Shown piece by piece: positions 23,422-48,549 of a stretch of 64,000 bases of DNA. Source of the DNA: Rebecca billardiae RCC1528 (Eukaryota > Protista > Haptophyta); the NCBI GenBank assembly GCA_965240325.2, contig OZ251227.1, positions 1,426,001-1,490,000 on the forward strand, in the 5' to 3' direction. The notes under the pieces were generated by a model, which had not been told where the DNA came from, ran no database searches, and saw nothing but the letters and a program-made list of their open reading frames with translations. Position numbers and translations under genes: made by a program. Positions within the stretch are counted from its first letter, which is position 1. Every line of letters starts with the position of its first letter.

Positions 23422-24863
23422 TCACGCGGCGCCGATGTTGCGCAGCGCGTGCACACCGGTGGACACGGCGGTCGCGAGCAGCTCGTTGAGCGCCTCGCCC
23501 GTCGCGCCGCCCCGCGCGAGCGCGCGGTCGACGAGCACGGGCAGCACGACCATGAGCGCGATGATGAGCGGCTCCTCCACGGCGAGCGACTGCGCCTCCG
23601 CCATGCTCCAGCTGAGCAGCAGGTAGCGCGTCTGCTCGGCGCCAAAGATGAGCGAGTAGGTGAGCACGATCCACGCGAGCGCGCCGTAGATGGAGAACAT
23701 GGCCGCCCACGCAAAGGCGAAGCGCGCGCGCGGCGGCGGCGTGAGCAGCCGCAGCAGCCGCGTGCACACGCCGCGCAGCCCGCGCGCGCGCCGCGCCTCC
23801 TTGAGCGCCTCGTCCGCCACCTGCCGGTCGTACCAGCCGACCAGCTCGGCGAAGGAGATGCGCCCGTCGCCGTCGAGGTCAAACTCCTGCGCGAGCGCGC
23901 GCACGCGCGCCGGGCGCAGCCGGAAGCCGAGCGAGCGCACGAGCTCGGCGAACTCTGCGCGCTCGATCATGCCGTTGCCGTTGGCGTCATGCGCGCAGAA
24001 CTTGAGCCGCAGCAGCTCGAGGGTGTCCGCGTCGAGCGAGTGGGCGGACGCGGGCGGGAGGAGCGGCGGGAGCGGCGCGTCGGCCGGGCCCGCGCCGCGC
24101 GCGCCGCGCGCGCCGGCGGGCGGCGTCTCGAACGGCGCCCGCGCCGCCGCGCCCGGGGCCGAGGGCGGCGAGCCTGGCGGCGGCGAGGGCGGCGGCGAGG
24201 CGTCATCGTCCGAGCAAGCAGCAGCATCGGACGCGTCGCTGCACTCACTGCCCGCCGCCGCCGCCGCGGCCATCGCCTCCTCCGGGTAGACGGGCGCGGG
24301 GCCAGCGACGTCGGCCGCCCGCTCCGGGAAGACGGGCGCGACGATGGCGCCGCCCACGCTCGCGCTGCGCGGCCGGCCGTACCGCGGCGCGGACGTCGGG
24401 CGCGAGCCCGCGGTGCTGGGCCTCGAGACGAGCAGCCCAAGCGCGTCCTCTGCGTCCGGACGCAGCGGGAGGCGCGAGCCGGCGGAGGCGGCGGATGCGC
24501 CGGAGGAGCGGCAGGGCAGCGTGCGGCCGAGCGTGAGCGAGGCCGGCGGCGCCGCGGCCGCGAGCTTGTCGCTCAGCGCCTCGGCCTCCTCGCGCTCCTC
24601 CTCCCACGCGGCGGCGGCGGCGGCCGCCGCGGTGGCGCGCTCGAACGCGCACTCGGCGGCGGCGAGCTCGGCGGCGGCGCTGGGCGAGTTGCATGGCGCG
24701 GTGCGGTCGTGCGTGGCGGGCCGCGCCGCCGAGCGCACGCGCGGGGACACGCGCGCGTTGCGCGGCGCCGGCGTCGTGGTCGGGCGCGGCGAGCCGAGCG
24801 CGCCGCCGAGCGACCAGCGGCCGACGAGCGCGCCGTCGTCGCCGCCGCCGCCGCCTCCCGGGC

Positions 24864-24900
<37 letters not shown>

Positions 24901-27900
24901 TGGCGAGATCTTGGCGGCGCGGCAGCTGAACGAGCCGCCGTCGCTGCGCGCGGGCGATTCGGCGCCGAGCTCGCCCGCCGCCACGGCCGCCGCGACGGGC
25001 GTGAGCGACGGCGCGGTGCGGCCGAGCAGCGCGCACGGCGACGGCAGCGCGGCGGGCTCGGCGCGCGCGCGCGGTGAGGCGGGCCCGCTGCGCGCGCCGG
25101 GCGCGCGGCCGGCGCGCGAGCCCGGCGGCAGCGGCGAGGCGAGACTGGACGGCGCGGCGGAGGTGGCGCTTGCGGACGGGCGGCGCGAGGCGGGCGCGCC
25201 GCCGCCGCCGCCGTGCACGCTCCCCGACGTCGTGCTCGAGAGCTCCCACGGCAGCTCGGCCGGCGCAGGCGCCCGCTGCCCGTCCGCGCCGCCGTGCTGC
25301 TGCGGCTGCTGCTGCTGCAGCCGCGCCGCCTCCGCCTCGATGGCGGCGCGGAGCCAGCCGGCGGAGGCGGCCGCGCCGGGCGTGCCGCGCGCGCCGACCG
25401 AGCCCTTGCGCGGCGCGGAGAAGAAGCCGAGCGAGCCGCGCCGGCTGCTCGCGGCGGACGCCGAGCCCCAGCCCATCGAGGCCCCCCAGCCGGAGCCGCC
25501 CAGACCTCCCGAGCTGGCCTCGCGCTCGAGCCGCGCGCGCACCGACGCCTTGAACGGCGTGCGCTCCTCGCGCCGCTGCGCGAGCTCGGCGCGGAGGAAG
25601 GCGGCGAAGACGCGCTTCGAGAGCGGCGCGGCGCTGCGCCCGTACCCGAAGCGGAAGAGCAGGCGGAAGAGGCCGAGCGCGGGCACGGTGAGCGCGGCGG
25701 TGAGCAGCGCGCTCAGCAGCGCGTGCGTCAGGTTGAGCGGCGCGCCGCGCCCGCCGGCCGGCCCCTCGTCGGGCGCGTACAGCATGCAGCTGATCACGAG
25801 CGCGAGCATCGCGATCGACCAGAAGATCTGCGCGTGCTCCGTGCGCCGGCTCTCCTCGCCGTCCGCGAAGAGCACGCCGAGCAGCGAGTGCTCGGTGCAC
25901 AGCCGCGCGCACACCCTGCGCAGCAGCGCGGTGAGCGCGTGGTCTCGCTCCAGCTGCGCGTGCAGCCGCGCGGGCCGGAGCAGCTTCTCGAGCGCGCGGC
26001 GCGCGCGGCGGCCGCGCACGTGGCGCTGCACCGTGCGCGCCGCCGCGTGCCGCGTGCGCAGCGCCCACTCGTCCAGCCCGTCCAGGCGGCGCTCGAGCCG
26101 GTCCGCCCAGTCGGGCGCGTCGGCGAGCGCGGCCGCGGCGCCATCGGCGATGCGCTCGCCTCTCTCGTCGCGAGGCGTCGGCGTGAACGGCGGCGTGGAC
26201 CAGACGCGGCGCGCGCACGAGCGCGCGGCGGCCGCGGCCGCCGTGGCCGCGGCCGCGGGGCTCGGCGGCACGCGCGCCGCCGCCGCCGCCGCCGGCGGCG
26301 GCGGTGGCAGCCCCTTGAGCGCGCGCTTGAGCCGCTGGCGCCGGCCGCGCGCGTCCGCCTTGTCGCGCGCCGCCGCGAGGCCGAGCGAGACGGCGCAGCC
26401 CGCGGACATGCCGATCACGAGGGCGAAGAGCAGCGGGCTCTCGACGGCGACGTCGCGCTCGACCAGCGCGTTGAGCTCGTCCAGCCGGATGCTCTGCACC
26501 TCGAACTCGGACGCGTCCTGCGCGAGCTCGGCGCTCGAGCCGGGCACGGACACGCCCGCAAAGTCGGTCAGGTGCGTGCACGCGCACGCGAGGGCGGCCG
26601 CGCCGCCGTCGGGCCCGAGGGTCTCGCAGCCGTCGCCGAGCCACGCGGCGCTGGGCTCGTCCCACCACATGCACGCCAGGCTGGCGCCCGCGTCCGCCTG
26701 CCCCGCCAGCTCGGCCGCGCCGAACGGCACGCGCAGCTCAATCGGCGGCTGCACGGCCGAGACAGAGACGGGCGCGCCGGTGGCCGCGTCGTACAGCGTG
26801 GCGGAGAGGGTCGCGCTGCGCAGCCGCTCGCCCAGGCTGCCGTTCGTCGCGGCGGCCGGGTCGGCGTGCACGTTGTGCGCGAAGACGAGCAGCACGAGGT
26901 CGAACACACCGCCGCCCTCCGCGCGCGCGCCGCCTCCCGCGGGGAGCGCTTGGCCGTGCGAGCCGTTCGGGGCGAGCAGCGTCGCCGGGAGGCTGATCGA
27001 GCCCGCGCCGCCGGGCAGCTCGACGAGCGTGGCGTTGGCGCCGGCGGGGGGGCCGAGCCGCGCGACCGAGAGGCTGAGCGCCTCGCCGAGCAGCTGCACG
27101 CCGCCGTCGCCCGGCAGCAGCCCGGCGCGCAGCGCGCGCGCGAGCGCGCTCGCGGCGCCGACCGCGGCGCGGCTGAGCGCGGCCGCCTCTGAGGCGGAGG
27201 CCGGCTCGGCGTCGGCGGAGAGCACGGCGTCGAGCGCGGCGTGCAGCGCGGCCGCGGTGGGCGCGTCGAGCCCCACGCCCGCCGCGCCCTCCGCGAGCGC
27301 CGCGAGCTGCTCCAAGCCCGCCGCGCGCGCGCTCGGCACGCCGAGCGCCGCCGGCGGCGCGCCGCCGAGCACGGCGCCGAGCGCGGCGCCGAGCTGCGCG
27401 CGCACCTCCGCGCTCGGCGCGGCGCCGGCGGCGTCGAGCGCGGCGGCGGTGAGCGCGAGGAGCGCGTGCACGCTCTCGACCGCCGCGCCCGCGCCCGCCG
27501 CGCCGAGCAGCTCCGCCGCCGCGCCCACCAGCTGCAGCAGCTCGTCCCACGCGCCGACCGCCTCAAGCAGCGCCGCGCGCTCGAGCGCGGACGACAGCAG
27601 CGCGCTCGGCGGCCGCCCGTCCAGCTGGGCGGCGGGCGCGACCTCGAGCGGGGCGTCGGCCGTGGCGAACGCGCCGAGCGCGTCGGCGACGCGCACGCGC
27701 GCGGTGCAGTTGCCCGCGGGCAGCACCGCGCGCGCGTACGGCGCGAGCGTCGCCGCGCCCAGCGCCACTTCCGGCGCGCCGAGCGGCAGCGCGGGCGCGC
27801 GCGCAAACGCGTACCACAGCGGCAGGTCGTCCGCCTCGTCCTCCGCCCAGCCGTGCGCGCGCAGCTCGAAGCGCGTGAGCAGCGCGTGCCCCGTGCGCGG

Positions 27901-30900
27901 CTCCGCGCTCAGCGCGCCGCCAAACGGCGGCCGGTTGATCGGCACGCGCACCGAGCCTATCCCAACCGCACCGGCCGGCTGCGGCGCGCCGCCTTCGCCC
28001 TCGCCCTCGCCCTCGCCGGCGCGCGCGGGCGCGGCGCTCACGCGCAGCTCGAAGGCGTACACGCCGCCCGGCGCGAGCACGGCGCGGTGGAAGCCGAGGG
28101 AGGGCGAGGCGTCGCCCGTCGTCGTCACGCGCGCGCGGTCGGCCAGCGCCAGCCCCGCCGGGCCGAGCGCCCCGGCCGCGCCCTCGAGCAGCGCGCGCCA
28201 CGCGCGGCCCACCGACAGCGGCGCGCCCGGCGGCAGCAGCAGCGCGCGCGCCACGCGCTCCAGAGACGGCTGCTCGAGCCGGGTGTGGAGCACCAGCCGC
28301 CCCGGCTCGGCGGGGCTGAGCCACGTCGGGTTGTACTTGGCGCGCGCGAGCGGCTCGAACAGCACCGTCGGCACCGCGTGCGCCACCACGCTCACGCGCA
28401 CGGCCGCGGCGGCGGAGGCGCGGCCTGCCTTGTCGACGCGCACGCTCGCGCGGTACTCAGCCGGGGGCAGCGCGCCCGCCGGGATGCGGAGCACCGGCGC
28501 GGAGGCGTCGACGCCGCCGAGCGTGCCGTTGGCGCCCCCGCCGAGGGGCAGCGGCGCGGGCTCGCCCTCGCGCTCGAGCGCCCAGCTGAAGCTCAGGCCG
28601 GCCGCCCCCGCCTCGCCCGGCTCGTTGGGGTCGGCGCTGGCGGACGCGTCAAGCCACAGCGGCGCGCTCGCGGACGCGACGCGGTCGCCGCCCGCCAGCG
28701 CCGCGCGCACCGGCTGCACGCGCACCGCGACGCGCACGAGCGCGCTCGCGGCCTGCGCGGGCGCGTCCGCCATCGCCGCGCGCACGCGCAGCTCGTACTC
28801 GAAGCCGGCCGAGAGCGCGTGCGGCCCGAGCTGCAGCGAGGAGGAGCGCGCGCCGCCGAGCTCGGGCACGCGCGCGCCCGCGGCCGCGGCAGCGGCGCCG
28901 AGCGCGGCCGCGTCGCCGGCCGCCGCGTCGCCGTCGACGAGCAGCGCGCCCGTCGACGCGTCGCGCAGCGCGGCGAGCGCCCAGGAGAAGCCGACGCGCG
29001 GGCTGTCGCGCGGCCAGCACTCGGCGAGCTCCGCGCGCGCCGCGAGGCGCAGCGGCCGGCCCGCCGCCACCTCCACGCGCGTCGGCCCAAGCAGCCGCAC
29101 GGACGGACGTCCGTCGTGCACGACGCGCACGCGCCAGCTGGCGGGCTCGGAGCTCGCGTTGAGCAGCGGGGAGGTGACGACGAGCGAGAAGGCGTACTCG
29201 CCGCTCGTGCCCAGCCCCTCGAGCCTCGGCGCGGCCGCGCGCGCACCCAGCGCACCCAGCGCACCGCGCACCGCGCCCACCCCCTCGGCGCTCGACGCGT
29301 TCGAGTCCGCATCCCAGCGGTACGCGAGGCCAGGCGCGCCGCCGCCGCGCGAGCCCGTGCCGTCGAGCACGAGCGCGGCGCCGGGGCACGCGGAGACGTG
29401 CGCCGGCGCGGAGATGGCGGCGACGGGCGGCGCGCACGCGCCGTCCTCGCACGGCGCCGCCGGGTCGATCAGCACGCTCGCCGCCGCCGAGCCGAGCGCC
29501 TCCGCGCACGCGGGCGCGCACGCGGCGGGCCAGAGCGCGCCCGCGCGCGCGCCAACCGTCGCGCCCGCGCGCAGCGCGGTGGCCGCGGTGAGCTGCGCGA
29601 GCAGCGTCGAGTCGTCGCGCCAGCGGCAGAGCGGCTCGGCGGCGGCGCCGCCCCGCAGCAGCGCGAGCGTCTCGTCGTCGAGCACCGCGTCGCAGCGGCC
29701 GAGGTCGCTGCCCATGCCCGCGCGGTCGGTCGGCTGCGCGTCGAAGCGCAGCAGCAGCCCGGTGAGCCGCGCGTCGAAGCCAGCCCACTCGAGCGAGGGC
29801 GCGTGCAGCGGCGGCGACGGCGGCGGCGGCGGGGGCGCGGGCGGCGGGGGCGCGGGCGGCGGGTGCGCCGGCGGCGTGGGCGGCGCGCTCTCGCACGAGC
29901 CGTCGTCCACCTCCGCGCCCGAGTCGAAGTTTGGCGCCGCCGCGTGTGCGCAGCCGGCGCGCAGCAGTACGGGGAGCGCCTCGACGCCAAAGCCGAGGAC
30001 GACGGAGAGCTCCGGCAGCGAGAGCGCGCGCAGCGCGCCCACCACGTCCACGCGCTCGCCCGTCGCGCTCAGCTCGCGCGCCCAGAAGACGACGAGGATC
30101 GACGCGGCGCTCACCGAGTGCACGCGCACGTGCGCGCTCGGCACGCCCGCCACCGCGGCCGCGCGCGCCGCCGAGCCGGCGCGCTCCTCGTCTGTCGCGA
30201 GCTCCGACACGTCGCCCGAGCCGAGCACGCTGAAGTACACCTCGGGGATCGGCGCGGGGGGCAGCGGCGGCGGGTGCGGCGGGCGCGGCGGCGAGGGCGG
30301 CGGCGAGGGCGGCGGCGGCGAGGCGGGCGGCGCGCTCGGGGGCGGGCTCGAGGGCGGCGGCGGCGAGGGCGGCAGGCTCGGCGGAGGAGGTGGCGGCGCC
30401 GAGGGCGGCGGCAGCGGCGGCGGCGACGGCGGCGGCGCGGGCGGCGGCGCGGACGGCGGCGGCAGCGGCGGCGGCGCGGGCGGCGGGCGTGGCGGCGGCG
30501 GAGGCAGTGGCGGTGGCGCCGGGCTCGGCGGCGGGCGCGGCTTCCAATCGGGCGGAGGGCGTGGCGGGCTCGGCGGTGGCGGCGCGCGAGGCGACGGCGA
30601 GGGCGGCGGCGAGGGCGGAGGCGAAGGCGCCGGGCTGGGCGGCGGCGGCGGCGGCGCGCTCGGTGGCGGCGGTGGCGGCGACGACGGCGGCGGCGCGGGC
30701 GGCGGCGGCGACGGCGGCGGCAGTGGCGGAGGCGGCGGCAGAGGCGGCGCCGGTGGCGGGTGCGGAGGCGAGGGTGGCGGCGGGCTGGGCGGCGGCGAGG
30801 GCGGAGGTGACGGCGGCGAGGGCGGCGGCGGCGAGGGCGGCGGCGAGGGCGGCGGGCTCGGCGGCGGCGGGCTTGGCGGCGGCGCCGGCGGCGGGCTGGG

Positions 30901-32568
30901 CGGCGAGGGCGGCGGCGGGCTCGGCGGCGGCGAGGGCGGCGGGCTCGGTGGCGAGGGCGGTGGCGCCGGCGGCGGCGGCGACGGTGGCGGGCTCGGCGGT
31001 GGCGAGGGCGGCGGGCTCGGCGGAGGCGACGGTGGGGGGGGTGGCGAGGGCGGCGGGCGTGGCGGGAGCGGCGGCGGGCGCGGTGGCGCCGGCGGCGGCG
31101 AGCTCGGCGGTGGCGAGGGGGGCGGGGCCGGCGGCGAGGGCGGCGGCAGCGAGGGCGGCGGCGAGGGCGGCGGTGAGGGCGGCGGCGGGCTCGGCGGCGG
31201 CATCGGACGCGGCGAGGGCGGCGGCGGCGGCGCGGGCGGCGCCGGCGGCGGCGCCGGTGGCATCGGCGGCGGCGATGAGGGCGGCGGGCTCGGCGGCGGG
31301 CTCGGCGGCGATGGTGGCGGCGGTGACGGCGGCGGCGACGGCGGCGGCGACGGCGGCGGCGGGCTCGGCGGCGGCGCGGGCGGCGGGCTCGGCGGTGCGG
31401 GCGGCGGGCTCGGCGGCGGCGGCGACGGCGGCGGCGAAGGCGGCGGCGGGCTGGGCGGCGGGGCGGGCGGCGGCCTCGGCGGCAGCGGCGGCGGCGGCGG
31501 CGCCGGTGGCGGTGAGGGCGGCGGCGGGCTCGGCGGCGGCATCGGACGCGGCGAGGGCGGCGGCGGCGGCGCGGGCGGCGCTGGCGGCGGCGCCGGCGGC
31601 GTCGGCGGCGGCGATGAGGGCGGCGGGCTCGGCGGCGGGCTCGGCGGCGATGGTGGCGGCGGTGACGGCGGCGGCGACGGCGGCGGCGACGGCGGCGGCG
31701 GGCTCGGCGGCGGCGCGGGCGGCGGGCTCGGCGGTGCGGGCGGCGGGCTTGGCGGCGGCGGCGACGGCGGCGGCGACGGCGGCGGCGGGCTGGGCGGCGG
31801 GGCGGGCGGCGGCCTCGGCGGCAGCGGCGGCGGCGGCGGCGATGGCGGCGGTGAGGGCGGCGCGGGCGGCATCGGCGGCGCATCTGGAGGCGGCGGCGGC
31901 GGCGGCGACGGCGGCGGCGGCGGTGGCATCGCCGGCGGCGGCGGCGGCGGCGGGCTCGGTGGCGGCGGCGGCGGCGGGCTCGAAGGCGGGCTCGGCGGCG
32001 GCGGCGGCGGCGCATGGGGCGGCGGGCTCGGCGGCGGGCTCGGCGGCGGCGGGGGCGGCAGTGGCGGCGCGGGCGGAGGCGAGGATGGCGGGCTCGGCGG
32101 CGGGCTGGGCGGCGCCGGTGGCAAGGGTGGGCTGGGCGGCGGTGGGCTGGGCGGTGGGCTTGGTGGGGATGGCGGCGGACTTGGCGGTGGGCTCGGCGGC
32201 GAAGGCGGCGAGGGCGGGCTCGGCGGTGGTGGGCTCGGCGGCGGGCTGGGCGGCGGTGGCGGCGGGCTCGGCGGCGGGCTGGGCGGCGGGCTTGGCGGCG
32301 GCGATGGTGGTGGCGGTGGCGGCGGGCTGGGCGGCGGCGGGCTGGGCGGCGGGCTCGGCGGCGGGCTCGGCGGAGGCGGAGACGGTGGCGGGCTGGGCGG
32401 TGGCGGGCTGGGTGGCGGGCTCGGCGGCGACGATGGCGGCGGCGAAGGTGGCGGGCTCGGCGGCGGGCTCGGCGGCGGCGGCGGTGGGCTAGGCGGCGGC
32501 GGGCTGGGCGGCGGGCTGGGCGGTGGCGAGGGCGGCGGCGAGGGCGGTGGGCTGGGCGGCGGGCTGGG

Positions 32569-32601
<33 letters not shown>

Positions 32602-37155: not shown

Positions 37156-37188
<33 letters not shown>

Positions 37189-39402: not shown

Positions 39403-39435
<33 letters not shown>

Positions 39436-39693: not shown

Positions 39694-39726
<33 letters not shown>

Positions 39727-40161: not shown

Positions 40162-40194
<33 letters not shown>

Positions 40195-42510
40195 CGGTGG
40201 CGGCGACGGCGGCGGCGGCGGTGGCGGAGACGGCGGTGGCGGGCTCGGTGGTGGGGATGGCGGAGGCGATGGCGGCGGCGGCGGTGGCGGGCTCGGCGGT
40301 GGCGATGGCGGCGGTGAGGGCGGCGGCGGCGGAGGCGGGCTTGGCGGTGGCGGGCTCGGAGGCGGCGACGGTGGTGGCGGTGGCGGCGAGCTCGGCGGCG
40401 GCGTCGACGGAGGCGGCGATGGCTGTGGGGGCGGCGGCGATGACGGCGGCGGTGGGCTCGGTGGCGGGCTCGGAGGCGGTGATGGCGGCGGCGGCGGAGG
40501 TGGACTCGGCGGTGGTGGCGACGGCGGCGGCGATGGCGGCGGTGGCGGTGGCGGGCTCGGCGGTGGTGGCGACGGCGGCGGTGATGGCGGCGGTGGCGGA
40601 GGTGGACTCGGCGGCGGCGGCGATGGCGGCGGCGATGGCGGCGGCGGCGGTGGCGGAAACGGCGGTGGCGGACTGGGTGGTAGGGATGGCGGAGGCGATG
40701 GCGGCGGCGGCGGAGGCGGGCTCGGAGGCGGCGGGCTCGGCGGCGGCGAAGGCGGCGGCGGCGGAGGCGGAGACGGCGGCGGAGGGCTCGGTGGTGGCGA
40801 CGGTGGCGGTGATGGTGGCGGCGGCGGTGGCGGGCTCGGTGGCGGTGGGCTCGGTGGCGGCGACGGCGGCGGCGGCGGTGGCGGAAACGGCGGTGGCGGA
40901 CTGGGTGGTGGGGATGGCGGAGGCGATGGCGGCGGCGGCGGAGGCGGGCTCGGAGGCGGCGGGCTCGGCGGCGGCGAAGGCGGCGGCGGCGGAGGCGGAG
41001 ACGGCGGCGGAGGGCTCGGTGGTGGCGACGGTGGCGGTGATGGTGGCGGCGGCGGTGGCGGGCTAGGTGGCGGTGGGCTCGGTGGTGGCAATGGCGGCGG
41101 CGGCGGTGGCGGAGACGGCGGCGGCGGGCTCGGCGGTGGCGATGGCGGCGGTGAGGGCGGCGGCGGCGGAGGCGGGCTTGGCGGCGGTGGCGATGGCGGC
41201 GGCGACGGCGGCGGCGGCGGTGGCGGAAACGGCGGTGGCGGACTGGGTGGTGGGGATGGCGGAGGCGACGGCGGCGGCGGCGGAGGCGGGCTCGGAGGCG
41301 GCGGGCTCGGCGGCGGTGAAGGCGGCGGCGGCGGTGGCGGAGACGGCGGCGGAGGGCTCGGTGGTGGCGACGGTGGCGGTGATGGTGGCGGCGGCGGTGG
41401 CGGGCTAGGTGGCGGTGGGCTCGGTGGTGGCAATGGCGGCGGCGGCGGTGGCGGAGACGGCGGCGGCGGGCTCGGCGGTGGCGATGGCGGCGGTGAGGGC
41501 GGCGGCGGCGGAGGCGGGCTTGGCGGCGGTGGGCTCGGTGGCGGCGACGGCGGCGGTGGCGGTGGCGGAGACGGCGGTGGCGGGCTCGGCGGTGGCGATG
41601 GCGGAGGCGATGGCGGCGGCGGCGGAGGCGAGCTCGGCGGCGGCGGCGACGGAGGCGGCGATGGCTGTGGGGGCGGCGGCGATGACGGCGGCGGTGGGCT
41701 CGGTGGCGGGCTCGGAGGCGGTGATGGCGGCGGTGGCGGCGGCGAGCTGGGGGGCGGCGGCGATGGCGGTGGGCGTGGCGGTGGTGGCGGCGGCGGACTT
41801 GGCGGTGGCGGGCTGGGCGGCGGGCTCGGCGGTGGCGACGGCGGCGGCGGTGGCGGCGAGCTCGGCGGCGGCGGCGACGGAGGCGGCGATGGCTGTGGGG
41901 GCGGCGGCGATGACGGCGGCGGTGGGCTCGGTGGCGGGCTCGGAGGCGGCGACGGCGGCGGTGGCGGCGGCGAGCTCGGTGGCGGCGGCGATGGCGGTGG
42001 GCTTGGTGGTGGTGGCGGCGGCGGACTTGGCGGTGGCGGGCTGGGCGGCGGGCTCGGAGGCGGCGACGGTGGTGGCGGTGGCGGCGAGCTCGGCGGCGGC
42101 GGCGACGGAGGCGGCGATGGCTGTGGGGGCGGCGGCGATGACGGCGGCGGTGGGCTCGGTGGCGGGCTCGGAGGCGGCGACGGCGGCGGTGGCGGCGGCG
42201 AGCTCGGTGGCGGCGGCGATGGCGGTGGGCTTGGTGGTGGTGGCGGCGGCGGACTTGGCGGTGGCGGGCTGGGCGGCGGGCTCGGAGGCGGCGACGGTGG
42301 TGGCGGTGGCGGCGAGCTCGGCGGCGGCGGCGACGGAGGCGGCGATGGCTGTGGGGGCGGCGGCGATGACGGCGGCGGTGGGCTCGGTGGCGGGCTCGGA
42401 GGCGGTGATGGCGGGGGCGGCGGCGGCGAGCTGGGGGGCGGCGGCGATGGCGGGGGCGATGGAGGCGGTGGCGGCGGCGGACTTGGCGGTGGCGGGCTGG
42501 GCGGCGGGCT

Positions 42511-42542
<32 letters not shown>

Positions 42543-43080
42543 AGCTGGGCGGTGGTGGCGATGGCGGTGGCGATGGTGGCGGTGGTGGCGGCGGACTTGG
42601 CGGTGGCGGGCTGGGCGGCGGGCTCGGAGGCGGCGACGGTGGTGGCGGTGGCGGCGAGCTCGGCGGCGGCGGCGACGGAGGCGGCGATGGCTGTGGGGGC
42701 GGCGGCGATGACGGCGGCGGTGGGCTCGGTGGCGGGCTCGGAGGCGGCGACGGCGGCGGTGGCGGCGGCGAGCTCGGTGGCGGCGGCGATGGCGGTGGGC
42801 TTGGTGGTGGTGGCGGCGGCGGACTTGGCGGTGGCGGGCTGGGCGGCGGGCTCGGAGGCGGCGACGGTGGTGGCGGTGGCGGCGAGCTCGGCGGCGGCGG
42901 CGACGGAGGCGGCGATGGCTGTGGGGGCGGCGGCGATGACGGCGGCGGTGGGCTCGGTGGCGGGCTCGGAGGCGGTGATGGCGGGGGCGGCGGCGGCGAG
43001 CTGGGGGGCGGCGGCGATGGCGGGGGCGATGGAGGCGGTGGCGGCGGCGGACTTGGCGGTGGCGGGCTGGGCGGCGGGCT

Positions 43081-43112
<32 letters not shown>

Positions 43113-44448
43113 AGCTGGGCGGTGGTGGCGATGGCGGTGGCGATGGTGGCGGTGGTGGCGGCGGACTTGGCGGTGGCGGGCTGGGCGGCGGGCTCGGAGG
43201 CGGCGACGGTGGTGGCGGTGGCGGCGAGCTCGGCGGCGGCGGCGACGGAGGCGGCGATGGCTGTGGGGGCGGCGGCGATGACGGCGGCGGTGGGCTCGGT
43301 GGCGGGCTCGGAGGCGGCGACGGCGGCGGTGGCGGCGGCGAGCTCGGTGGCGGCGGCGATGGCGGTGGGCTTGGTGGTGGTGGCGGCGGCGGACTTGGCG
43401 GTGGCGGGCTGGGCGGCGGGCTCGGAGGCGGCGACGGTGGTGGCGGTGGCGGCGAGCTCGGCGGCGGCGGCGACGGAGGCGGCGATGGCTGTGGGGGCGG
43501 CGGCGATGACGGCGGCGGTGGGCTCGGTGGCGGGCTCGGAGGCGGTGATGGCGGCGGTGGCGGCGGCGAGCTCGGTGGCGGCGGCGATGGCGGTGGGCTC
43601 GGTGGTGGTGGCGGCGGCGGACGTGGCGGTGGCGGGCTGGGCGGCGGGCTCGGAGGTGGCGACGGTGGTGGCGGTGGCGGCGAGCTCGGCGGCGGCGGCG
43701 ACGGAGGCGGCGATGGCTGTGGGGGCGGCGGCGATGACGGCGGCGGTGGGCTCGGCGGCGGGCTCGGAGGCGGCGACGGCGGGGGCGGCGGCGGCGAGCT
43801 GGGGGGCGGCGGCGATGGCGGGGGCGATGGAGGCGGTGGCGGCGGCGGACTTGGCGGTGGCGGGCTGGGCGGCGGGCTCGGAGGCGGCGACGGTGGTGGC
43901 GGTGGCGGCGAGCTCGGCGGCGGCGGCGACGGAGGCGGCGATGGCTGTGGGGGCGGCGGCGATGATGGCGGCGGTGGGCTCGGTGGCGGGCTCGGAGGCG
44001 GCGACGGCGGCGGTGGCGGCGGCGAGCTCGGTGGCGGCGGCGACGGAGGCGGCGATGGCTGTGGGGGCGGCGGCGATGACGGCGGCGGTGGGCTCGGTGG
44101 CGGGCTCGGAGGCGGTGATGGCGGCGGTGGCGGCGGCGAGCTCGGTGGCGGCGGCGATGGCGGTGGGCTCGGTGGTGGTGGCGGCGGCGGACTTGGCGGT
44201 GGCGGGCTGGGCGGCGGGCTCGGATGCGGCGACGGTGGTGGCGGTGGCGGCGAGCTCGGCGGCGGCGGCGACGGAGGCGGCGATGGCTGTGGGGGCGGCG
44301 GCGATGACGGCGGCGGTGGGCTCGGTGGCGGGCTCGGAGGCGGTGATGGCGGGGGCGGCGGCGGCGAGCTGGGGGGCGGCGGCGATGGCGGGGGCGATGG
44401 AGGCGGTGGCGGCGGCGGACTTGGCGGTGGCGGGCTGGGCGGCGGGCT

Positions 44449-44480
<32 letters not shown>

Positions 44481-44790
44481 AGCTGGGCGGTGGTGGCGAT
44501 GGCGGTGGCGATGGTGGCGGTGGTGGCGGCGGACTTGGCGGTGGCGGGCTGGGCGGCGGGCTCGGAGGCGGCGACGGTGGTGGCGGTGGCGGCGAGCTCG
44601 GCGGCGGCGGCGACGGAGGCGGCGATGGCTGTGGGGGCGGCGGCGATGACGGCGGCGGTGGGCTCGGTGGCGGGCTCGGAGGCGGTGATGGCGGGGGCGG
44701 CGGCGGCGAGCTGGGGGGCGGCGGCGATGGCGGGGGCGATGGAGGCGGTGGCGGCGGCGGACTTGGCGGTGGCGGGCTGGGCGGCGGGCT

Positions 44791-44822
<32 letters not shown>

Positions 44823-45132
44823 AGCTGGGCGGTGGTGGCGATGGCGGTGGCGATGGTGGCGGTGGTGGCGGCGGACTTGGCGGTGGCGGGCTGGGCGGCG
44901 GGCTCGGAGGCGGCGACGGTGGTGGCGGTGGCGGCGAGCTCGGCGGCGGCGGCGACGGAGGCGGCGATGGCTGTGGGGGCGGCGGCGATGACGGCGGCGG
45001 TGGGCTCGGTGGCGGGCTCGGAGGCGGTGATGGCGGGGGCGGCGGCGGCGAGCTGGGGGGCGGCGGCGATGGCGGGGGCGATGGAGGCGGTGGCGGCGGC
45101 GGACTTGGCGGTGGCGGGCTGGGCGGCGGGCT

Positions 45133-45164
<32 letters not shown>

Positions 45165-46158
45165 AGCTGGGCGGTGGTGGCGATGGCGGTGGCGATGGTG
45201 GCGGTGGTGGCGGCGGACTTGGCGGTGGCGGGCTGGGCGGCGGGCTCGGAGGCGGCGACGGTGGTGGCGGTGGCGGCGAGCTCGGCGGCGGCGGCGACGG
45301 AGGCGGCGATGGCTGTGGGGGCGGCGGCGATGACGGCGGCGGTGGGCTCGGTGGCGGGCTCGGAGGCGGCGACGGCGGCGGCGGTGGCGGCGAGCTCGGC
45401 GGCGGCGGCGACGGAGGCGGCGATGGCTGTGGGGGCGGCGGCGATGACGGCGGCGGTGGGCTCGGTGGCGGGCTCGGAGGCGGCGACGGCGGCGGTGGCG
45501 GCGGCGAGCTCGGTGGCGGCGGCGATGGCGGTGGGCTTGGTGGTGGTGGCGGCGGCGGACTTGGCGGTGGCGGGCTGGGCGGCGGGCTCGGAGGCGGCGA
45601 CGGTGGTGGCGGTGGCGGCGAGCTCGGCGGCGGCGGCGACGGAGGCGGCGATGGCTGTGGGGGCGGCGGTGATGACGGCGGCGGTGGGCTCGGTGGCGGG
45701 CTCGGAGGCGGTGATGGCGGCGGTGGCGGCGGCGAGCTCGGTGGCGGCGGCGACGGAGGCGGCGATGGCTGTGGGGGCGGCGGCGATGACGGCGGCGGTG
45801 GGCTCGGTGGCGGGCTCGGAGGCGGTGATGGCGGCGGTGGCGGCGGCGAGCTCGGTGGCGGCGGCGATGGCGGTGGGCTTGGTGGTGGTGGCGGCGGCGG
45901 ACTTGGCGGTGGCGGGCTGGGCGGCGGGCTCGGAGGCTGCGACGGTGGTGGCGGTGGCGGCGAGCTTGGCGGCGGCGGCGACGGAGGCGGCGATGGCTGT
46001 GGGGGCGGCGGCGATGACGGCGGCGGTGGGCTCGGTGGCGGGCTCGGAGGCGGTGATGGCGGCGGTGGCGGCGGCGAGCTCGGTGGCGGCGGCGATGGCG
46101 GTGGGCTCGGTGGTGGTGGCGGCGGCGGACTTGGCGGTGGCGGGCTGGGTGGCGGGCT

Positions 46159-46190
<32 letters not shown>

Positions 46191-47251
46191 AGCTGGGCGG
46201 TGGTGGCGATGGCGGTGGCGAAGGTGGCGGTGGCGGCGGCGGACTTGGCGGTGGCGGACTGGGCGGCGAGCTCGGAGGCGGTGATGGCGGCGGTGGTGGC
46301 GGCGAGCTCGGCGGCGGCGGCGATGGCGGTGGGCTCGGTGGTGGTGGCGGCGGCGGAGACGGCGGCGGTGGGCTCGGTGGCGGGCTCGGCGGTGGCGACG
46401 GCGGCGGTGGGCTCGGTGGTGGTGGCGGCGGCGGACTTGGCGGTGGCGGGCTGGGCGGCGGGCTCGGAGGTGGCGACGGTGGTGGCGGCGGAGGCGAGCT
46501 CGGCGGCGGCGGCGACGGAGGCGGCGATGGCTGTGGGGGCGGCGGCGATGACGGCGGCGGTGGGCTCGGTGGCGGGCTCGGAGGCGGTGATGGCGGCGGT
46601 GGCGGCGGCGAGCTCGGTGGCGGCGGCGATGGCGGTGGGCTCGGTGGTGGTGGCGGATGTGGGCTCGGCGGTGGCGGGCTCGGCGGCGGGCTCGGCGGCG
46701 GGCTTGGTGGCGGCGGAGGCGGCGAGCTCGGTGGCGGTCGCGCCAGCGGTTGGGGTGGCGGCGGGCTTGGTGGTGGTGGCGGCGGCGAGCTTGGTGGCGG
46801 CGAGCTCGGTGGCGGTTGCGCCGGCGGTTGGGGCGGCGGCGGGCTCGGCGGCGGTGGCGGCGGCGGTGGCGGCGGCGAGCTCGGTGGCGACGATGGCGGC
46901 GGCGGCGGCGGCGAGGGGGGAGACGGTGGCGGTCGCACGGGCGGTGGCGGCGGCGGTGGGCTTGGAGGCGGCGGAGGCGAAGCTGGCGAGTCACACGCAT
47001 CACACGCGATCGTCGCTTCCGCATCGGTGCACATGTCAAAGCCACCGTCGTCGTCGTCGTCGTCGTCATCACCGCTGAGCCGGCGGCGGCGATGGTCGAG
47101 GCGGCGGCGCTCACCGTCGCCGCCAAGCCCGTCCGGCCGATCCTCCGAGCGGCGCAGCCAGGCCGGTGCACCTGCGCGCGCCGGCATGGTCGCGAGGCGG
47201 CGGCGCGCGCGGCGGTCCTGCCCTCCACCGGTGTGGCAGTCATCGTCGACA

Positions 47252-47284
<33 letters not shown>

Positions 47285-48549
47285 GAGGTCAGCTGGCGTC
47301 GCCCAGCAGCTTCGAGCGCCACGGTCCCCGCGTCATTCCCCGCGGCGCCGCGCGCCAGGCTCAGCATCCGGCGCGCGCGCCGCCGGTCGGAGCCGTCCTC
47401 GGCGCCGTCATCGAGGCAGCCCGGCTCGACGCTGCCCCAGAGCTCGACAGCGGCGCACGCGCCGACGGGGGCGTCGTTGGCGGCGAAGGTGTTGCAGCGC
47501 AGCCGCAGGCAGCCCTCCGACAGAAGGATCGCGCCACCGCCGAGCTCCGCCTCGTTCCCGCGGAAGGCGCTCATGGCGACCCGCAGCGTGCTCCACTCGG
47601 CCGCGATCGCGCCGCCGTACCTGCCGGCGGTGTTGTTCTCAAACGAGCTGCGCGACACGTCGAGGGGCCGGGCGTCGTACGCGTACACGGCGGCGCCGGA
47701 GGAGGAGACGCCAAAGTGCGTGAACGCCGAGTCCTCGACGAAGACGGCGCTCCCGTAGATGTACGCAGCGCCGCCCGTGGTCGCGGCCGCGCCCGGCCAC
47801 TCCGGCCCCGCAAACGCGCAGCCTCGGCACGTCCAGCTCGAGGCGTACACGTACCACGCGCCGCCGACCTGGCCGGCGACGGAGGCGCCGAAGCTGGCCG
47901 TGTGCACGTCGAGCGTCGAGTACACGGCGTACACCGCGCCGCCCGTCCACGCCGCGACGTTGTCGTCGAAGTGGCCGCGCATCAGCAAGAGGGAGGACTC
48001 GAAGACGCATGCCGCCGCACCCTGCGTCGCGCTGTTGCCGCGGAATTCGCAGTCCTCGAGCGTCGCCGTCGACTGGTAGATGAGCGCGCCGCCGCCGTCA
48101 GACACGCCGCCGTTGTCGTAGAAGGTGCAGTTGCTCAGCGTGGCGCTCGACCTGTACACCTTGAGCGCGCCGCCCTGGCTTGCGTCCTGGAAGCGAAGGC
48201 GGTGGAGAGAGAGCCGCGCGGCGTGGTCGGCCTTCATCAGCCGGCCAGCGAGGCTCGGCCCCGGCGTGAGCACCGCCGGCGCGCTCGTGTTCGCGCACGC
48301 GACCGTCACGTCGTCCTTGTCCACGCACAGCGTGGATGCAACCTCGAACGTCGTCGGCTCGAGCACGAGCGTGTCACACGCGCGCAGGTCGGCAAACGCC
48401 GCGCTGAGCTCCGCGGTCGTGCCGATGGGCACCGTGCGACAAGCGGTGGCAGACGCACGCCCGACGGGCACGAGCAGCTGGGCAGCTGTGAGCACCAGCG
48501 CGCGGCAGAGCACGCCCTTCGGGCGTGCCGCGGAGTGGTAGCGTGCCAT
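23422..48549 (-). CDS. Giant (8375 aa) polycystin-1/REJ-GPS-like membrane protein with beta-helix head and extensin-like stalk
   Basis: Uninterrupted ORF; signal peptide; GG(A/G)-FxxN beta-helix repeats; SPn stalk; REJ-like region (ALAGGDR, LDASASADP, PINRPPFGG, PRTGHALLTRF); GPS CMWWD..W..GC..CACTHLTDF at ~26560-26673; five TM helices; IQ motif; two EF-hands. Confidence 0.85.
30250..46980 (-). repeat. 16.7-kb coding Ser-Pro(n) repeat array with distinct sub-arrays (114-, 51- and 63-bp units)
   Basis: GGCTGTGGGG spaced 228/342 bp (multiples of 114) at 41.6-46.5 kb; 51-bp unit at ~37.4-38.8 kb; 63-bp Met-containing unit at ~35.2-36.4 kb; another 63-bp unit x4 at ~34.5-34.75 kb. Confidence 0.95.
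34831..39315 (-). repeat. Three near-identical 285-bp Cys-rich modules (39031-39315, 36493-36777, 34831-35115) plus a diverged copy at 33337-33600
   Basis: CNGNGAVQ...CAAALYSACSVFSFWADTGECYCCPD...WESEWVC is identical in protein; only a few synonymous differences. Confidence 0.95.

What the first reader, a model, noticed from the sequence alone, without database searches (positions are those of the whole stretch)
23422..48549. 25-kb single-ORF polycystin-1-like receptor on a micrometre-scale extensin stalk, with Ca2+-sensing modules instead of a channel
Seen: signal peptide, beta-helix head, ~5,500-aa SPn stalk, SEA-like and REJ-like regions, GPS with intact HL|T, five TM helices, IQ motif and EF-hand pair, all in one ORF while neighbouring genes have introns. 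Known: REJ+GAIN/GPS+TM defines the PKD1/REJ family, HL|T is the autoproteolysis site, and polyproline-II rises ~0.31 nm per residue. Inference: ~5,200 Pro-rich residues could hold a carbohydrate-binding head ~1.6 um from the membrane as a self-cleaving tether or mechanosensor, e.g. a surface filament, scale or flagellar hair. I do not recognise this combination as described.
Basis: partly seen in the sequence, partly recalled or inferred. Interest (0 to 1): 0.92.

Follow-up and report, generated by a model that had tools for sequence, protein, structure and literature searches.

The report
Giant stalked polycystin-1-like algal receptor
A haptophyte alga encodes, in one uninterrupted 25-kb exon, an 8,375-residue surface protein: an adhesin-like head on a Ser-Pro rod that could reach about 1.6 micrometres, anchored by the front half of a polycystin-1-type receptor that carries calcium-sensing motifs and no ion-channel half. 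It belongs to a large, undescribed family of such proteins.

Summary
Window 23422-48549 (minus strand) is one 8,375-codon ORF with coding-type codon bias in all its non-repetitive parts.

Confirmed features:
- a signal peptide and a beta-helix head (Pfam);
- 5,209 Ser/Pro-rich residues in five segments, separated by four Cys modules;
- REJ (Pfam 3e-27);
- a GAIN fold with intact HL|T (AlphaFold plus Foldseek, BAI3 E 1.6e-7);
- five TM helices that superpose on human polycystin-1 TM1-TM5 (Z 16, top of 48,161 chains);
- a conserved IQ motif and a canonical EF-hand pair.

There is no PLAT domain and no channel half. Relatives end at the same C-terminus.

The SEA-like call is unconfirmed, and read-level checking of the array was impossible.

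The closest named relatives are Pavlovales (Diacronema lutheri) "hypothetical" proteins. A D. lutheri paralogue also carries a hidden ~1,900-residue (SPPP)n stalk that its annotation cut off, and a third organism shows the same layout.

First-stage notes of this scan report at least 15 similar giants elsewhere in this genome, so this is one member of a family.

The closest described analogue is Chlamydomonas MST3/Mstax, a poly-hydroxyproline rod on a PKD2-like anchor. This protein uses the other half of polycystin-1.

Verdict: real, and a new variant of a known kind. Its function as a cleavable tether or mechanosensor is inferred.

The parts
23422..48549 (-). Whole ORF: 8,375 codons plus stop, predicted 820 kDa before glycosylation
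48448..48549 (-). Signal-peptide-like N-terminus (aa 1-34, hydrophobic core aa 11-30)
   Evidence: read from the sequence; no dedicated predictor was run
47395..48447 (-). Right-handed beta-helix head (aa ~35-385), Chlam_PMP-type repeats
   Evidence: Pfam Beta_helix 3.3e-10, Chlam_PMP 3e-8; atlas feature hits 0.94-0.95 to beta-helix/PMP clusters
46990..47394 (-). Charged linker (aa 386-520): two poly-Asp runs flanked by Arg-rich RRxRRL stretches
   Evidence: function unknown
39316..46989 (-). Stalk segment 1 (aa 521-3078; 2,558 aa; 77% Pro, 21% Ser; 38/76/114-aa periodicity)
39031..39315 (-). Cys module 1 (aa 3079-3173, 8 Cys), possibly PAN/Apple-like
   Evidence: no Pfam or PDB sequence hit
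36778..39030 (-). Stalk segment 2 (aa 3174-3924; 21-aa units)
36493..36777 (-). Cys module 2 (aa 3925-4019). Same protein sequence as module 1, with 2 synonymous nucleotide differences
35116..36492 (-). Stalk segment 3 (aa 4020-4478; SPPPMPPP-type 21-aa units)
34831..35115 (-). Cys module 3 (aa 4479-4573). Same protein sequence, with 1-3 synonymous nucleotide differences
33601..34830 (-). Stalk segment 4 (aa 4574-4983; less regular, 68% Pro)
33337..33600 (-). Cys module 4 (aa 4984-5071). Diverged copy, 42% identical, lacks the RPRRL-containing insertion
30244..33336 (-). Stalk segment 5 (aa 5072-6102; 1,031 aa)
29890..30243 (-).
   Evidence: Present after the stalk in L002 and L004 as well. 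SEA assignment not confirmed
27610..29889 (-). Pro linker, Ig/PKD-like region and REJ domain (aa ~6221-6980)
   Evidence: Pfam REJ 3e-27, weak PKD_4; homologues align here
26545..27609 (-). GAIN domain (aa ~6981-7335): helical subdomain A plus beta-sandwich subdomain B containing the GPS
   Evidence: AF2 pLDDT about 90; Foldseek BAI3 4dlo 1.6e-7 and other adhesion-GPCR GAIN domains; suREJ1, PKD1L2 and PKD1L3 in AFDB clusters
26566..26574 (-). GPS cleavage triad H7326-L7327 | T7328, followed by the conserved TDFAG(V/I)xVP stalk peptide
26368..26436 (-). TM1 (aa 7372-7394)
25999..26031 (-). IQ motif VQRHVRGRRAR (aa 7507-7517) in cytosolic loop 1, where PKD1 has PLAT
25654..25827 (-). TM2 and TM3 (aa 7575-7592 and 7610-7632)
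24031..25653 (-). Long cytosolic loop 2 (aa ~7633-8173), low-complexity Ala/Ser/Gly/Pro-rich and mostly predicted disordered (two isolated predicted helices; ~5 aa at its start are the end of the TM3 helix)
   Evidence: long stretches under pLDDT 50: model residues 341-366, 383-660, 698-870; helices at model residues 344-381 and 659-697 reach pLDDT 65-76; GC3 stays at 0.95-0.99
23782..24030 (-). EF-hand pair (aa 8174-8256). Ca2+ loops DANGNGMIERAE (8188-8199) and DLDGDGRISFAE (8224-8235)
   Evidence: Pfam EF-hand_7 6.7e-13; calmodulin-lobe fold
23515..23715 (-). TM4 and TM5 (aa 8279-8302 and 8327-8345), then a 30-aa helical C-terminus
   Evidence: The C-terminus coincides with those of homologues

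Best explanation
This is a real, single-exon gene of a very GC-rich Pavlovales-type haptophyte. It encodes a giant surface receptor.

Shown:
- Its base is the N-terminal half of a polycystin-1/REJ-type protein: REJ domain, GAIN domain with an intact HL|T autoproteolysis site, and the TM1-TM5 bundle.
- It ends after TM5, so it has no PLAT domain and no PKD2-like channel half.
- The first cytosolic loop carries a conserved IQ motif.
- The second loop carries a canonical EF-hand pair about 20 residues (aa 8257-8278) before TM4.
- This base is a conserved cassette shared by many paralogues and by relatives in other Pavlovales.
- In front of it the gene has a variable part: a beta-helix adhesin-like head and about 5,200 Ser-Pro(3,4,7) residues, interrupted by four Cys-rich beads.

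Inferred:
- The Ser-Pro segments form glycosylated polyproline-II rods, as in Chlamydomonas MST1/MST3 and extensins. They would hold the head up to about 1.6 um from the membrane.
- The GAIN domain self-cleaves, leaving a ~7,300-residue extracellular fragment non-covalently held on the membrane fragment.
- Pull or shear on the head is passed down the rod. It strains or removes the N-terminal fragment and exposes the conserved TDFAG(V/I)xVP peptide.
- That changes the five-TM bundle, whose output is read and tuned by Ca2+ through the EF-hand pair and by calmodulin, or the protein's own EF lobe, on the IQ helix.
- Any ion flux would need a separate partner such as a PKD2-type channel.
For: - ORF and coding bias.
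- Repeat units are 94-95% identical as protein but only 57-70% identical at third codon positions. The three Cys modules differ only by synonymous changes. So the stalk is under selection as protein and is not made of identical DNA copies.
- Pfam REJ, GPS, EF-hand and Beta_helix hits.
- GAIN fold.
- Five-TM bundle: the top structural match out of 48,161 chains is polycystin-1 8z6b_A residues 3063-3610, at Z 16.0, rmsd 2.7 A and 192 aligned residues. The next non-EF-hand matches are at Z 10.7 or less.
- Family: 826 library hits, 16 of them below 1e-30. The best are from Diacronema lutheri and Pavlovales sp. CCMP2436. They share the same REJ-GPS-TM1-IQ-TM2-TM3-EF-TM4-TM5 order and the same C-terminal end.
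- The stalk-plus-base layout recurs independently. D. lutheri locus L002 has a 5,890-aa ORF: signal peptide, ~1,900 aa of (SPPP)n, the same post-stalk module, then TIG, REJ, GPS, 5TM and EF. L004, from another organism, has at least 570 aa of SP-rich ORF running to the contig end, upstream of the same module and of REJ/GPS.
- In L002 the only signal peptide lies upstream of the stalk, so the stalk must be translated for the ectodomain to be exported.
- Precedent that PPII helices can span hundreds of nanometres on a polycystin-type anchor: PMC11015965.
- Haptophytes have ExAD-like GT47 genes and Ser-Pro3-4 proteins: PMC5371791, PMC10290126.
Against: - There is no expression, proteomic or read-level evidence for this gene. 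No sequencing run was listed, and the exact protein is not in a collection of 15 billion sequences.
- Repeat copy number could be mis-assembled in sub-blocks, given a 968-nt exact repeat.
- Hydroxylation, glycosylation, GPS cleavage, Ca2+ binding and localisation are all untested.
- Some GAIN domains with an HL|T motif do not cleave.
- Helical bundles tend to give high structural Z-scores, so Z 16 is convincing mainly because the top hit is the family already predicted from REJ and GPS.
- None of the 150 best library homologues shows a stalk in its annotated model. At least one of those models is demonstrably truncated.
Confidence: 0.6

Rival explanations
1. Filament-core reading. The protein is the axial thread of a discrete surface appendage, for example the fine non-tubular flagellar hairs of Pavlovales. 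Like Chlamydomonas MST3/Mstax, its strictly periodic Ser-Pro rod would template the binding of other glycoproteins. The polycystin-type base would mainly be an anchor, and sensing would be secondary.
For: - MST3/Mstax precedent: about 8,000 aa, N-terminus distal, lectin domains, a Hyp-repeat stem and a polycystin-type TM anchor.
- The 38/76/114-aa period is kept at 94-95% protein identity despite divergent third codon positions. That fits a ruler or template better than a plain spacer.
- The Cys beads lie at fixed places.
- The length matches micrometre-scale hairs (own knowledge of Pavlova ultrastructure, not checked in a paper here).
Against: - The anchor differs from MST3: REJ-GAIN-TM1-5 here, a PKD2-like S2-S6 there. 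The MST3 paper mentions no REJ, GPS or GAIN.
- No MST1-like partner was sought or found.
- First-stage notes report many paralogues with quite different heads and stalk lengths. That suits a receptor repertoire better than one uniform hair.
Confidence: 0.2
2. Passive adhesin or agglutinin reading. The protein only displays an adhesive head far from the cell, for substrate, prey or gamete adhesion. It would be comparable to Chlamydomonas sexual agglutinins (head on a PPII shaft) or sea-urchin REJ1. The GAIN site would serve shedding, and the IQ and EF motifs trafficking or turnover rather than mechanosensing.
For: - The head is a Chlam_PMP-type beta-helix, an adhesin-type fold.
- REJ proteins of sea urchin, Ectocarpus and Cryptosporidium are tied to gamete recognition (PMC4700764; bioRxiv 10.64898/2026.10.13.757955).
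- suREJ1 is among the structural matches.
- Heads vary across paralogues.
Against: The five-TM bundle, the IQ motif, the EF-hand pair and the post-cleavage peptide are conserved across the family. That is more than a passive anchor needs, since a single TM helix would suffice.
Confidence: 0.15
3. Artefact or non-gene reading. The Ser-Pro array is mis-assembled or greatly inflated. Alternatively, the head and tail are separate genes joined only by an open, GC-rich low-complexity tract, or the locus is a pseudogene.
For: - At 81% GC, and in CCN-rich repeats, several frames stay open. Other frames here hold ORFs of 4,436 and 3,025 aa.
- 65% of stalk 31-mers are non-unique.
- There was no read support to inspect.
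Against: - The Ser-Pro reading phase never slips over 16.7 kb, and all four Cys modules are in frame.
- Positions 1 and 2 of repeat codons are about 95% conserved, against 57-70% for position 3.
- Differences between modules are all synonymous.
- The tail has no signal peptide of its own.
- The same layout occurs in two other assemblies.
- An independent Logan contig matches the window 100% over 3.4 kb elsewhere, so the assembly is accurate at least there.
Confidence: 0.05

Closest known systems
Polycystin-1 / REJ family (human PKD1, PKD1L1-3, PKDREJ; sea-urchin suREJ1-3)
   Same: REJ domain (Pfam 3e-27). GAIN/GPS with HL|T directly before TM1. A TM1-TM5 bundle that superposes on PKD1 3063-3610 (Z 16). 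The loop pattern also matches: a long cytosolic loop 1, a short TM2-3 hairpin, a long cytosolic loop 2 and a short TM4-5 hairpin. suREJ1, PKD1L2 and PKD1L3 are among the GAIN-region structural matches.
   Different: No PLAT domain in loop 1; an IQ motif sits there instead. No TM6-11 PKD2-like half, TOP domain or coiled coil. An EF-hand pair sits in loop 2. The N-terminus is a beta-helix head on a ~5,200-residue Ser-Pro rod rather than LRR, C-lectin or PKD repeats.
Chlamydomonas MST3 / Mstax and the seven other SIP-dependent poly-Pro PKD2-like proteins (PMC11015965; bioRxiv 10.1101/2024.12.24.630281)
   Same: About 8,000 residues, with the N-terminus distal. Globular binding domains plus very long Pro-rich, presumably PPII, rods. 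A polycystin-type membrane anchor. A family with variable ectodomains. The gene models were also incomplete before manual revision.
   Different: MST3 is anchored by an incomplete PKD2-like channel domain (S2-S6) that SIP completes, and has no REJ, GAIN or GPS. This protein uses the other polycystin-1 module (REJ-GAIN-TM1-5) and has no pore domain. The lineage differs (haptophyte versus green alga). The repeat sequences differ: SP3/SP4/SP7 here, Hyp11-(X2Hyp)n-Hyp12 there.
Adhesion GPCRs (BAI, latrophilin, GPR126 and others)
   Same: GAIN fold and GPS sequence (Foldseek 1.6e-7; profile E 6e-8). The T-x-F-A start of the post-cleavage peptide resembles the tethered-agonist core (own knowledge).
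   Different: The membrane part is a five-TM PKD1-type bundle, not a seven-TM family-B domain.
Extensins and algal HRGPs, including Chlamydomonas sexual agglutinins (globular head on a PPII shaft; own knowledge)
   Same: Ser-Pro3, Ser-Pro4 and Ser-Pro7 repeats (358, 258 and 121 copies). A head-on-shaft design.
   Different: There is almost no Tyr in the stalk, so no YXY-type cross-link motifs. It is an integral membrane protein rather than a wall or extrinsic protein. It comes from a haptophyte, where Hyp-O-glycosylation has not been shown. It is more than 10 times longer than typical extensins.
Protist REJ+GPS membrane proteins (Ectocarpus Esi0130_0068, PMC4700764; Phytophthora and other hits)
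   Same: REJ, GPS and TM helices, without PLAT.
   Different: In the scans run here those proteins show no IQ/EF cassette and no Ser-Pro stalk. The Ectocarpus protein is reported to have a polycystin cation-channel hit.

Membership tests
Polycystin-1 / REJ family | REJ domain in the ectodomain | tested here: met
   Pfam PF02010 E 3e-27, 95.8 bits against a cutoff of 25
Polycystin-1 / REJ family | GAIN domain with GPS (HL|T) immediately before TM1 | tested here: met
   Pfam GPS 1e-5. AF2 model with Foldseek hits to BAI3, BAI2, CL1 and GPR126 GAIN domains, E 1.6e-7 to 1e-5. CxC-THLTDF motif
Polycystin-1 / REJ family | N-terminal five-TM module (PKD1 TM1-TM5) | tested here: met
   VIA-align wide: top hit 8z6b_A, residues 3063-3610, Z 16.0, rmsd 2.7 A, 192 aa
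Polycystin-1 / REJ family | PLAT/LH2 domain in the first cytosolic loop | tested here: not met
   No PLAT hit at E<=1. The loop holds an IQ motif instead
Polycystin-1 / REJ family | C-terminal six-TM PKD2-like half with TOP/polycystin domain (11 TM in total) | tested here: not met
   No PKD_channel hit. The ORF stops 30 aa after TM5. Homologues end within about 10 aa of the same point. A separate TOG-domain gene follows. suREJ1 and suREJ2 also lack this half (own knowledge)
Polycystin-1 / REJ family | Actual autoproteolysis at the GPS | not testable with these tools
   Needs protein work
Adhesion GPCR | Seven-TM family-B domain after the GAIN domain | tested here: not met
   Five TM helices. 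The best structural match is PKD1, not a GPCR
MST3/Mstax-type mastigoneme axial protein | PKD2-like TM domain lacking S1, completed by SIP | tested here: not met
   No PKD_channel hit. The TM bundle matches PKD1 TM1-5, not the channel half
MST3/Mstax-type mastigoneme axial protein | Very long Hyp-rich PPII stem carrying ordered glycans and wrapped by MST1 | not testable with these tools
   The sequence is 68-81% Pro with Ser spacing. Hydroxylation, glycans and partners are unknown
Extensin / HRGP | Ser-Pro(3-5) repeats | tested here: met
   358 SPPP, 258 SPPPP, 121 SP7 and 56 SP6
Extensin / HRGP | Tyr cross-linking motifs (YXY, VYK) | tested here: not met
   One Tyr in 5,209 stalk residues
Extensin / HRGP | Prolyl 4-hydroxylation and O-arabinosylation or galactosylation | not testable with these tools
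   Literature only: ExAD-like GT47 in haptophytes (PMC5371791)
EF-hand Ca2+ sensors | Paired helix-loop-helix with canonical 12-residue loops (D-x-[DN]-x-[DN]-G-x-I-x-x-x-E) | tested here: met
   Pfam EF-hand_7 6.7e-13. Loops DANGNGMIERAE and DLDGDGRISFAE. Calmodulin-lobe fold, TM up to 0.88 by target
IQ calmodulin-binding motif | [ILV]QxxxRGxxx[RK] on a helix | tested here: inconclusive
   Exact consensus VQRHVRGRRAR, conserved in 7 relatives. It lies on a predicted helix. Pfam IQ reaches only E 0.28, below its cutoff. The profile weakly hits the IQ regions of Sp17, RSP23 and myosin-5
SEA domain | About 120-aa alpha/beta sandwich, often with a G|SVVV cleavage motif | tested here: inconclusive
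   No Pfam SEA hit for three orthologous modules. Atlas score 0.69 only. The L004 copy has GSIVV and the window copy has ASILVV.
PAN/Apple domain (Cys modules) | Cys-knotted apple fold | tested here: inconclusive
   Atlas feature scores of 0.90-0.92 to PAN clusters, with only 139-155 shared features. No Pfam hit and no PDB sequence hit

The most novel reading that the evidence does not exclude
The REJ-GAIN-TM1-5 module is an autonomous, channel-less signalling unit with a built-in Ca2+/calmodulin switch. In Pavlovales it would anchor a repertoire of micrometre-long glycosylated polyproline filaments with interchangeable heads. That would be a second, independent polycystin-anchored 'hair' system besides the Chlamydomonas mastigoneme, built on the complementary half of polycystin-1. 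If so, rod-on-polycystin mechanosensing would be an old and general design of protist cell and ciliary surfaces. Animal PKD1 could then be read as a fusion of such a receptor half with a PKD2-like channel half.
Probability: 0.25. Interest if true: 0.85.

Novelty: new variant of a known kind. Interest (0 to 1): 0.7.

Why it matters
Polycystin-1 is the main gene mutated in human polycystic kidney disease. It is still debated what its N-terminal half (REJ, GAIN, TM1-5) does apart from the channel half.

Here that half occurs alone, conserved and multiplied. It is wired to Ca2+-sensing motifs and attached to what would be among the longest single-polypeptide rods known, about 1.6 um. That offers a natural system for asking how force on an ectodomain is passed through a GAIN domain into the TM1-5 bundle.

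It also extends the 2024 mastigoneme discovery, polyproline rods on polycystin anchors, from green algae to haptophytes.

Finally, it shows that current Pavlovales annotations cut these genes short. In D. lutheri, KAG8459354.1 has 3,751 aa, but the ORF at its locus has 5,890 aa.

Tried and rejected
1. Read-level check of the array. The look-up of sequencing runs listed no run for the tail or for the head. A Logan contig of ERR14847148 is 100% identical to window 3795-7213.

2. The search for homologous proteins. It timed out on the whole protein with the tail region. It found nothing with the 1,191-aa piece or with alignment A1, probably because Ala/Pro-rich words swamped the word filter. A neighbour ORF returned only generic LRR hits and did not identify the organism.

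3. Exact look-up of the 8,375-aa protein: not in the collection.

4. Foldseek of the TM model against PDB and Swiss-Prot saw only the EF-hand lobe. The PKD1 match came only from the Foldseek-independent search.

5. PDB sequence searches found only GPS and IQ similarities, with no PKD1 TM match.

6. The SEA and PAN assignments could not be confirmed.

7. Green-alga origin, my first guess from the GC content and the extensin-like repeats. Rejected: the nearest named relatives are Pavlovales haptophytes, and 73% GC fits D. lutheri.

8. A continuation of the gene into downstream exons that would add a channel half. Rejected: the next ORF on the same strand is a TOG/XMAP215-like protein, and the family's C-termini coincide.

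9. The repeat finder on the stalk gave only a flood of overlapping families. My own scripts were used instead.

Full report
**1. Is it there?**

Window 23422-48549 on the minus strand is one ORF of 8,375 codons with an ATG start. The window averages about 73% GC, and the ORF about 81%. At that composition long open frames are common. Two other frames across the repeats are open for 4,436 and 3,025 codons, so openness alone proves little.

Three things show that the annotated frame is coding.
- In the ORF frame, GC3 is 0.91-1.00 in every 100-codon block of the tail and 0.88-0.96 over the first 400 codons of the head, while GC2 is 0.5-0.7. GC3 drops (0.81, 0.68) only in the Asp/Arg linker and at the start of the stalk. 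No intron-like block appears.
- The Ser-Pro reading phase never slips over 16.7 kb, and four Cys-rich modules embedded in the repeats are all in frame.
- Repeat units at their 38/76/114-residue period are 94-95% identical as protein. They are only 82-86% identical as DNA and 57-70% identical at third codon positions. The three Cys modules have identical protein sequences and differ by 1-3 synonymous bases. This is purifying selection on a translated product, not a stack of identical DNA copies.

**2. Anatomy**

Positions are in residues; window coordinates are in the parts list.

*Head and linker*
- aa 1-34: a signal-peptide-like start.
- aa ~35-385: a right-handed beta-helix. Pfam gives Beta_helix 3.3e-10 and Chlam_PMP 3e-8, and feature search agrees.
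- aa 386-520: a charged linker with two poly-Asp runs between Arg-rich stretches.

*Stalk*
- aa 521-6102: five Ser/Pro-rich segments of 2558, 751, 459, 410 and 1031 residues. Together these are 5,209 residues, 68-81% Pro.
- The repeats comprise 358 SPPP, 258 SPPPP, 121 SP7 and 56 SP6.
- There is virtually no Tyr.
- The segments are separated by four ~90-residue modules with eight Cys each. Three are identical and one is 42% identical.

*Ectodomain of the base*
- Next come a Pro linker, an Ig/PKD-like region and the REJ domain (Pfam 3e-27).
- aa ~6981-7335: the GAIN domain.

*Membrane part*
- Five hydrophobic helices.
- IQ consensus VQRHVRGRRAR at aa 7507-7517, in the TM1-TM2 loop.
- A ~540-residue, mostly disordered, low-complexity TM3-TM4 loop.
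- That loop ends in an EF-hand pair (Pfam 6.7e-13). Its two loops, DANGNGMIERAE and DLDGDGRISFAE, are canonical.
- With the N-terminus outside, the helix count puts both the IQ motif and the EF-hands in the cytosol, which is self-consistent.

**3. Fold evidence**

An AlphaFold2 model of aa 6950-7640 was built on 25 homologues. It has a helical subdomain and a beta-sandwich at pLDDT about 90.
- Foldseek against the PDB returns GAIN domains of BAI3 (E 1.6e-7), BAI2, latrophilin, GPR126, GPR56 and CD97.
- Against AlphaFold DB clusters it returns PKD/REJ-like and GAIN-B proteins, sea-urchin sperm receptor for egg jelly, PKD1L2, human PKD1L3 and a Tetrahymena REJ protein.

A second model covers aa 7300-8375. 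Its helices and EF-hands are ordered (pLDDT 70-96) and its loops are mostly disordered.
- Foldseek saw only the calmodulin-like lobe.
- The Foldseek-independent search of 48,161 PDB representatives put polycystin-1 first. The hit is chain A of the PC1/PC2 complex, 8z6b: Z 16.0, rmsd 2.7 A, 192 aligned residues, model 53-1033 onto PKD1 3063-3610.
- To my knowledge that PKD1 range is exactly TM1 to TM5.
- The next matches are EF-hand lobes at Z 11.6 or less.
- The tool warns that helical bundles can reach Z of about 13-14 by arrangement alone. I find this match persuasive because the single best chain is the family already predicted from REJ and GPS, and it covers just the expected module.

No PLAT or PKD_channel signal exists at E<=1.

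**4. The gene ends after TM5**

The stop lies 30 residues after TM5. The next ORF on the same strand (21711-16615) is a TOG/XMAP215-like protein. In seven or more homologues the alignment runs to within 1-7 residues of their C-termini. So the absence of a channel half is a family trait, not a truncated gene model.

**5. Relatives and organism**

A full HMMER scan of 1.84 billion representatives with aa 6450-7640 gave 826 hits, 16 of them below 1e-30.
- The best named hits are *Diacronema lutheri* KAG8462819.1 and KAG8459354.1 ("hypothetical" or "EF-hand domain-containing") and Pavlovales sp. CCMP2436 KAJ1635852.1 ("REJ domain-containing").
- The next tier includes *Phytophthora*.
- The top ~15 share the cassette REJ-GPS-TM1-IQ-TM2-TM3-EF pair-TM4-TM5. 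The family consensus around the cleavage site is LxCACTHLTDFAGIxVPTS.
- Lower-tier protist hits have REJ, GPS and TM helices, but no IQ/EF, PLAT or channel.

The 73% GC matches *D. lutheri* (PMC8379373). Identities of 39-41% mean these are paralogue-level relatives. I conclude that the window comes from a Pavlovales-type haptophyte whose species I could not fix. A Logan contig from run ERR14847148 is 100% identical to window 3795-7213.

**6. Is the stalk-on-base design recurrent?**

Yes. None of the 150 best hits shows a Ser/Pro stalk in its deposited model, but the models are cut short.
- At the *D. lutheri* locus of KAG8459354.1 (3,751 aa) the genome has a 5,890-codon ORF. It reads: signal peptide, ~1,900 residues of (SPPP)n, the same post-stalk module, then TIG, REJ, GPS, 5TM and EF. 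The only signal peptide sits in front of the stalk, so the stalk must be translated for the REJ/GAIN ectodomain to be exported.
- In a contig from a third, less GC-rich organism (SRR30664515), the frame upstream of the called gene is open to the contig end. It holds at least 570 Ser/Pro-rich residues, again followed by the same module and by TIG, REJ and GPS.
- First-stage notes of this scan list at least 15 further giants in this same genome with other heads (LRR, FG-GAP, RCC1, integrin-like) on Ser-Pro stalks and the same base. Those notes are unchecked and I use them only as leads. They fit what I verified in L002 and L004.

**7. How it probably works**

Shown: the domain order, the folds, the intact catalytic triad, canonical Ca2+ loops, the conserved IQ motif and the absence of a pore domain.

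Inferred from established knowledge:
- Ser-Pro(n) tracts of this density form polyproline-II helices that, once hydroxylated and O-glycosylated, are stiff. The mastigoneme structures show that such helices span hundreds of nanometres (PMC11015965; bioRxiv 10.1101/2024.12.24.630281).
- Haptophytes have ExAD-like GT47 genes and Ser-Pro3-4 proteins (PMC5371791, PMC10290126).
- GAIN domains cleave at HL|T and keep the two fragments together until force removes the N-terminal fragment. That exposes the first residues of the C-terminal fragment as a tethered ligand, as in adhesion GPCRs and PKD1 (PMC9672506 reviews the PKD1 case).

My best reading (about 0.6) is therefore a cleavable tether or mechano-adhesion receptor. 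Its five-TM bundle is modulated by Ca2+ through the juxtamembrane EF pair and by calmodulin, or its own EF lobe, on the IQ helix. Any ion flux would come from a separate partner.

The strict 38/76/114-residue periodicity hints that the rod is also a ruler or template. That keeps the MST3-like filament-core reading alive (about 0.2). A passive adhesin or agglutinin reading gets about 0.15, and an artefact about 0.05.

**8. What remains open**
- Repeat copy number. The longest exact repeat is 968 nt and 65% of stalk 31-mers are non-unique. No reads were available.
- Expression of the gene.
- All post-translational steps.
- Localisation.
- Whether the post-stalk module is SEA.
- Whether the Cys modules are PAN/Apple-like (a lead only).

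**9. Novelty**

The parts are known. A related design was published for *Chlamydomonas* in 2024. REJ/GPS proteins of protists have been noted before (PMC4700764; bioRxiv 10.64898/2026.10.13.757955). In the library searched, I found no description of a channel-less REJ-GAIN-TM1-5 cassette with IQ and EF-hands, nor of its fusion to micrometre Ser-Pro rods. I rate it a new variant of a known kind, at family level. This locus is one good, complete example.

Noticed in passing
L002:4144-21816 (Diacronema lutheri JAGTXO010000041.1): The deposited model KAG8459354.1 (3,751 aa) is a truncation of a 5,890-codon single ORF. The signal peptide and the ~1,900-residue (SPPP)n stalk were left out. The 6.7 kb upstream of the model carries no called gene.
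   Followed up: yes
window 30244-46989 (stalk) compared with the rest of the ORF: Pro codon usage differs sharply. CCA makes up 20-25% of Pro codons in stalk segments 1-3 but about 2% outside the stalk, where CCG and CCC dominate. This may relieve tRNA demand or reduce slippage. Unexplained.
   Followed up: partly
window 29890-29960; L002 near 10400; L004 near 2030: The post-stalk module ends in a conserved Cys-bounded motif, G-C-x5-N-[FY]-[DE]-x-x-A-x-x-D-D-[GA]-S-C. It is seen in all three loci and has no Pfam match.
   Followed up: no
window 46990-47394 (aa 386-520): The head-stalk linker has two poly-Asp runs (aa 424-437 and 494-503) bracketed by RRARR(M/R)L and RRRRL stretches. These might be dibasic processing sites or a Ca2+-binding acidic patch. 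Another first-stage note (s1-336831) also flags this.
   Followed up: no
window 39031-39315, 36493-36777, 34831-35115: The three identical Cys modules carry a 9-residue insertion (part of ...PPRPRRLSSVPD...) with an RxRR-type basic site. The diverged fourth module (33337-33600) lacks it.
   Followed up: partly
window 16615-21711 (minus strand, and probably up to about 23154): The neighbouring gene downstream is a TOG/HEAT-repeat XMAP215/MOR1-like microtubule-associated protein. The end of its long ORF runs into a CCVCCV... low-complexity tail that looks like read-through into an intron.
   Followed up: no
window 48001-56000: About 8 kb upstream of the giant gene has much lower GC (0.63-0.67) than the coding regions and no ORF of 300 aa or more. 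It may be a long intergenic, intronic or repeat region.
   Followed up: no
L003 (Logan contig of ERR14847148) = window 3795-7213: A public run holds DNA 100% identical to the window over 3,419 bases, so reads of this organism exist. However, the look-up of sequencing runs did not list any run.
   Followed up: partly
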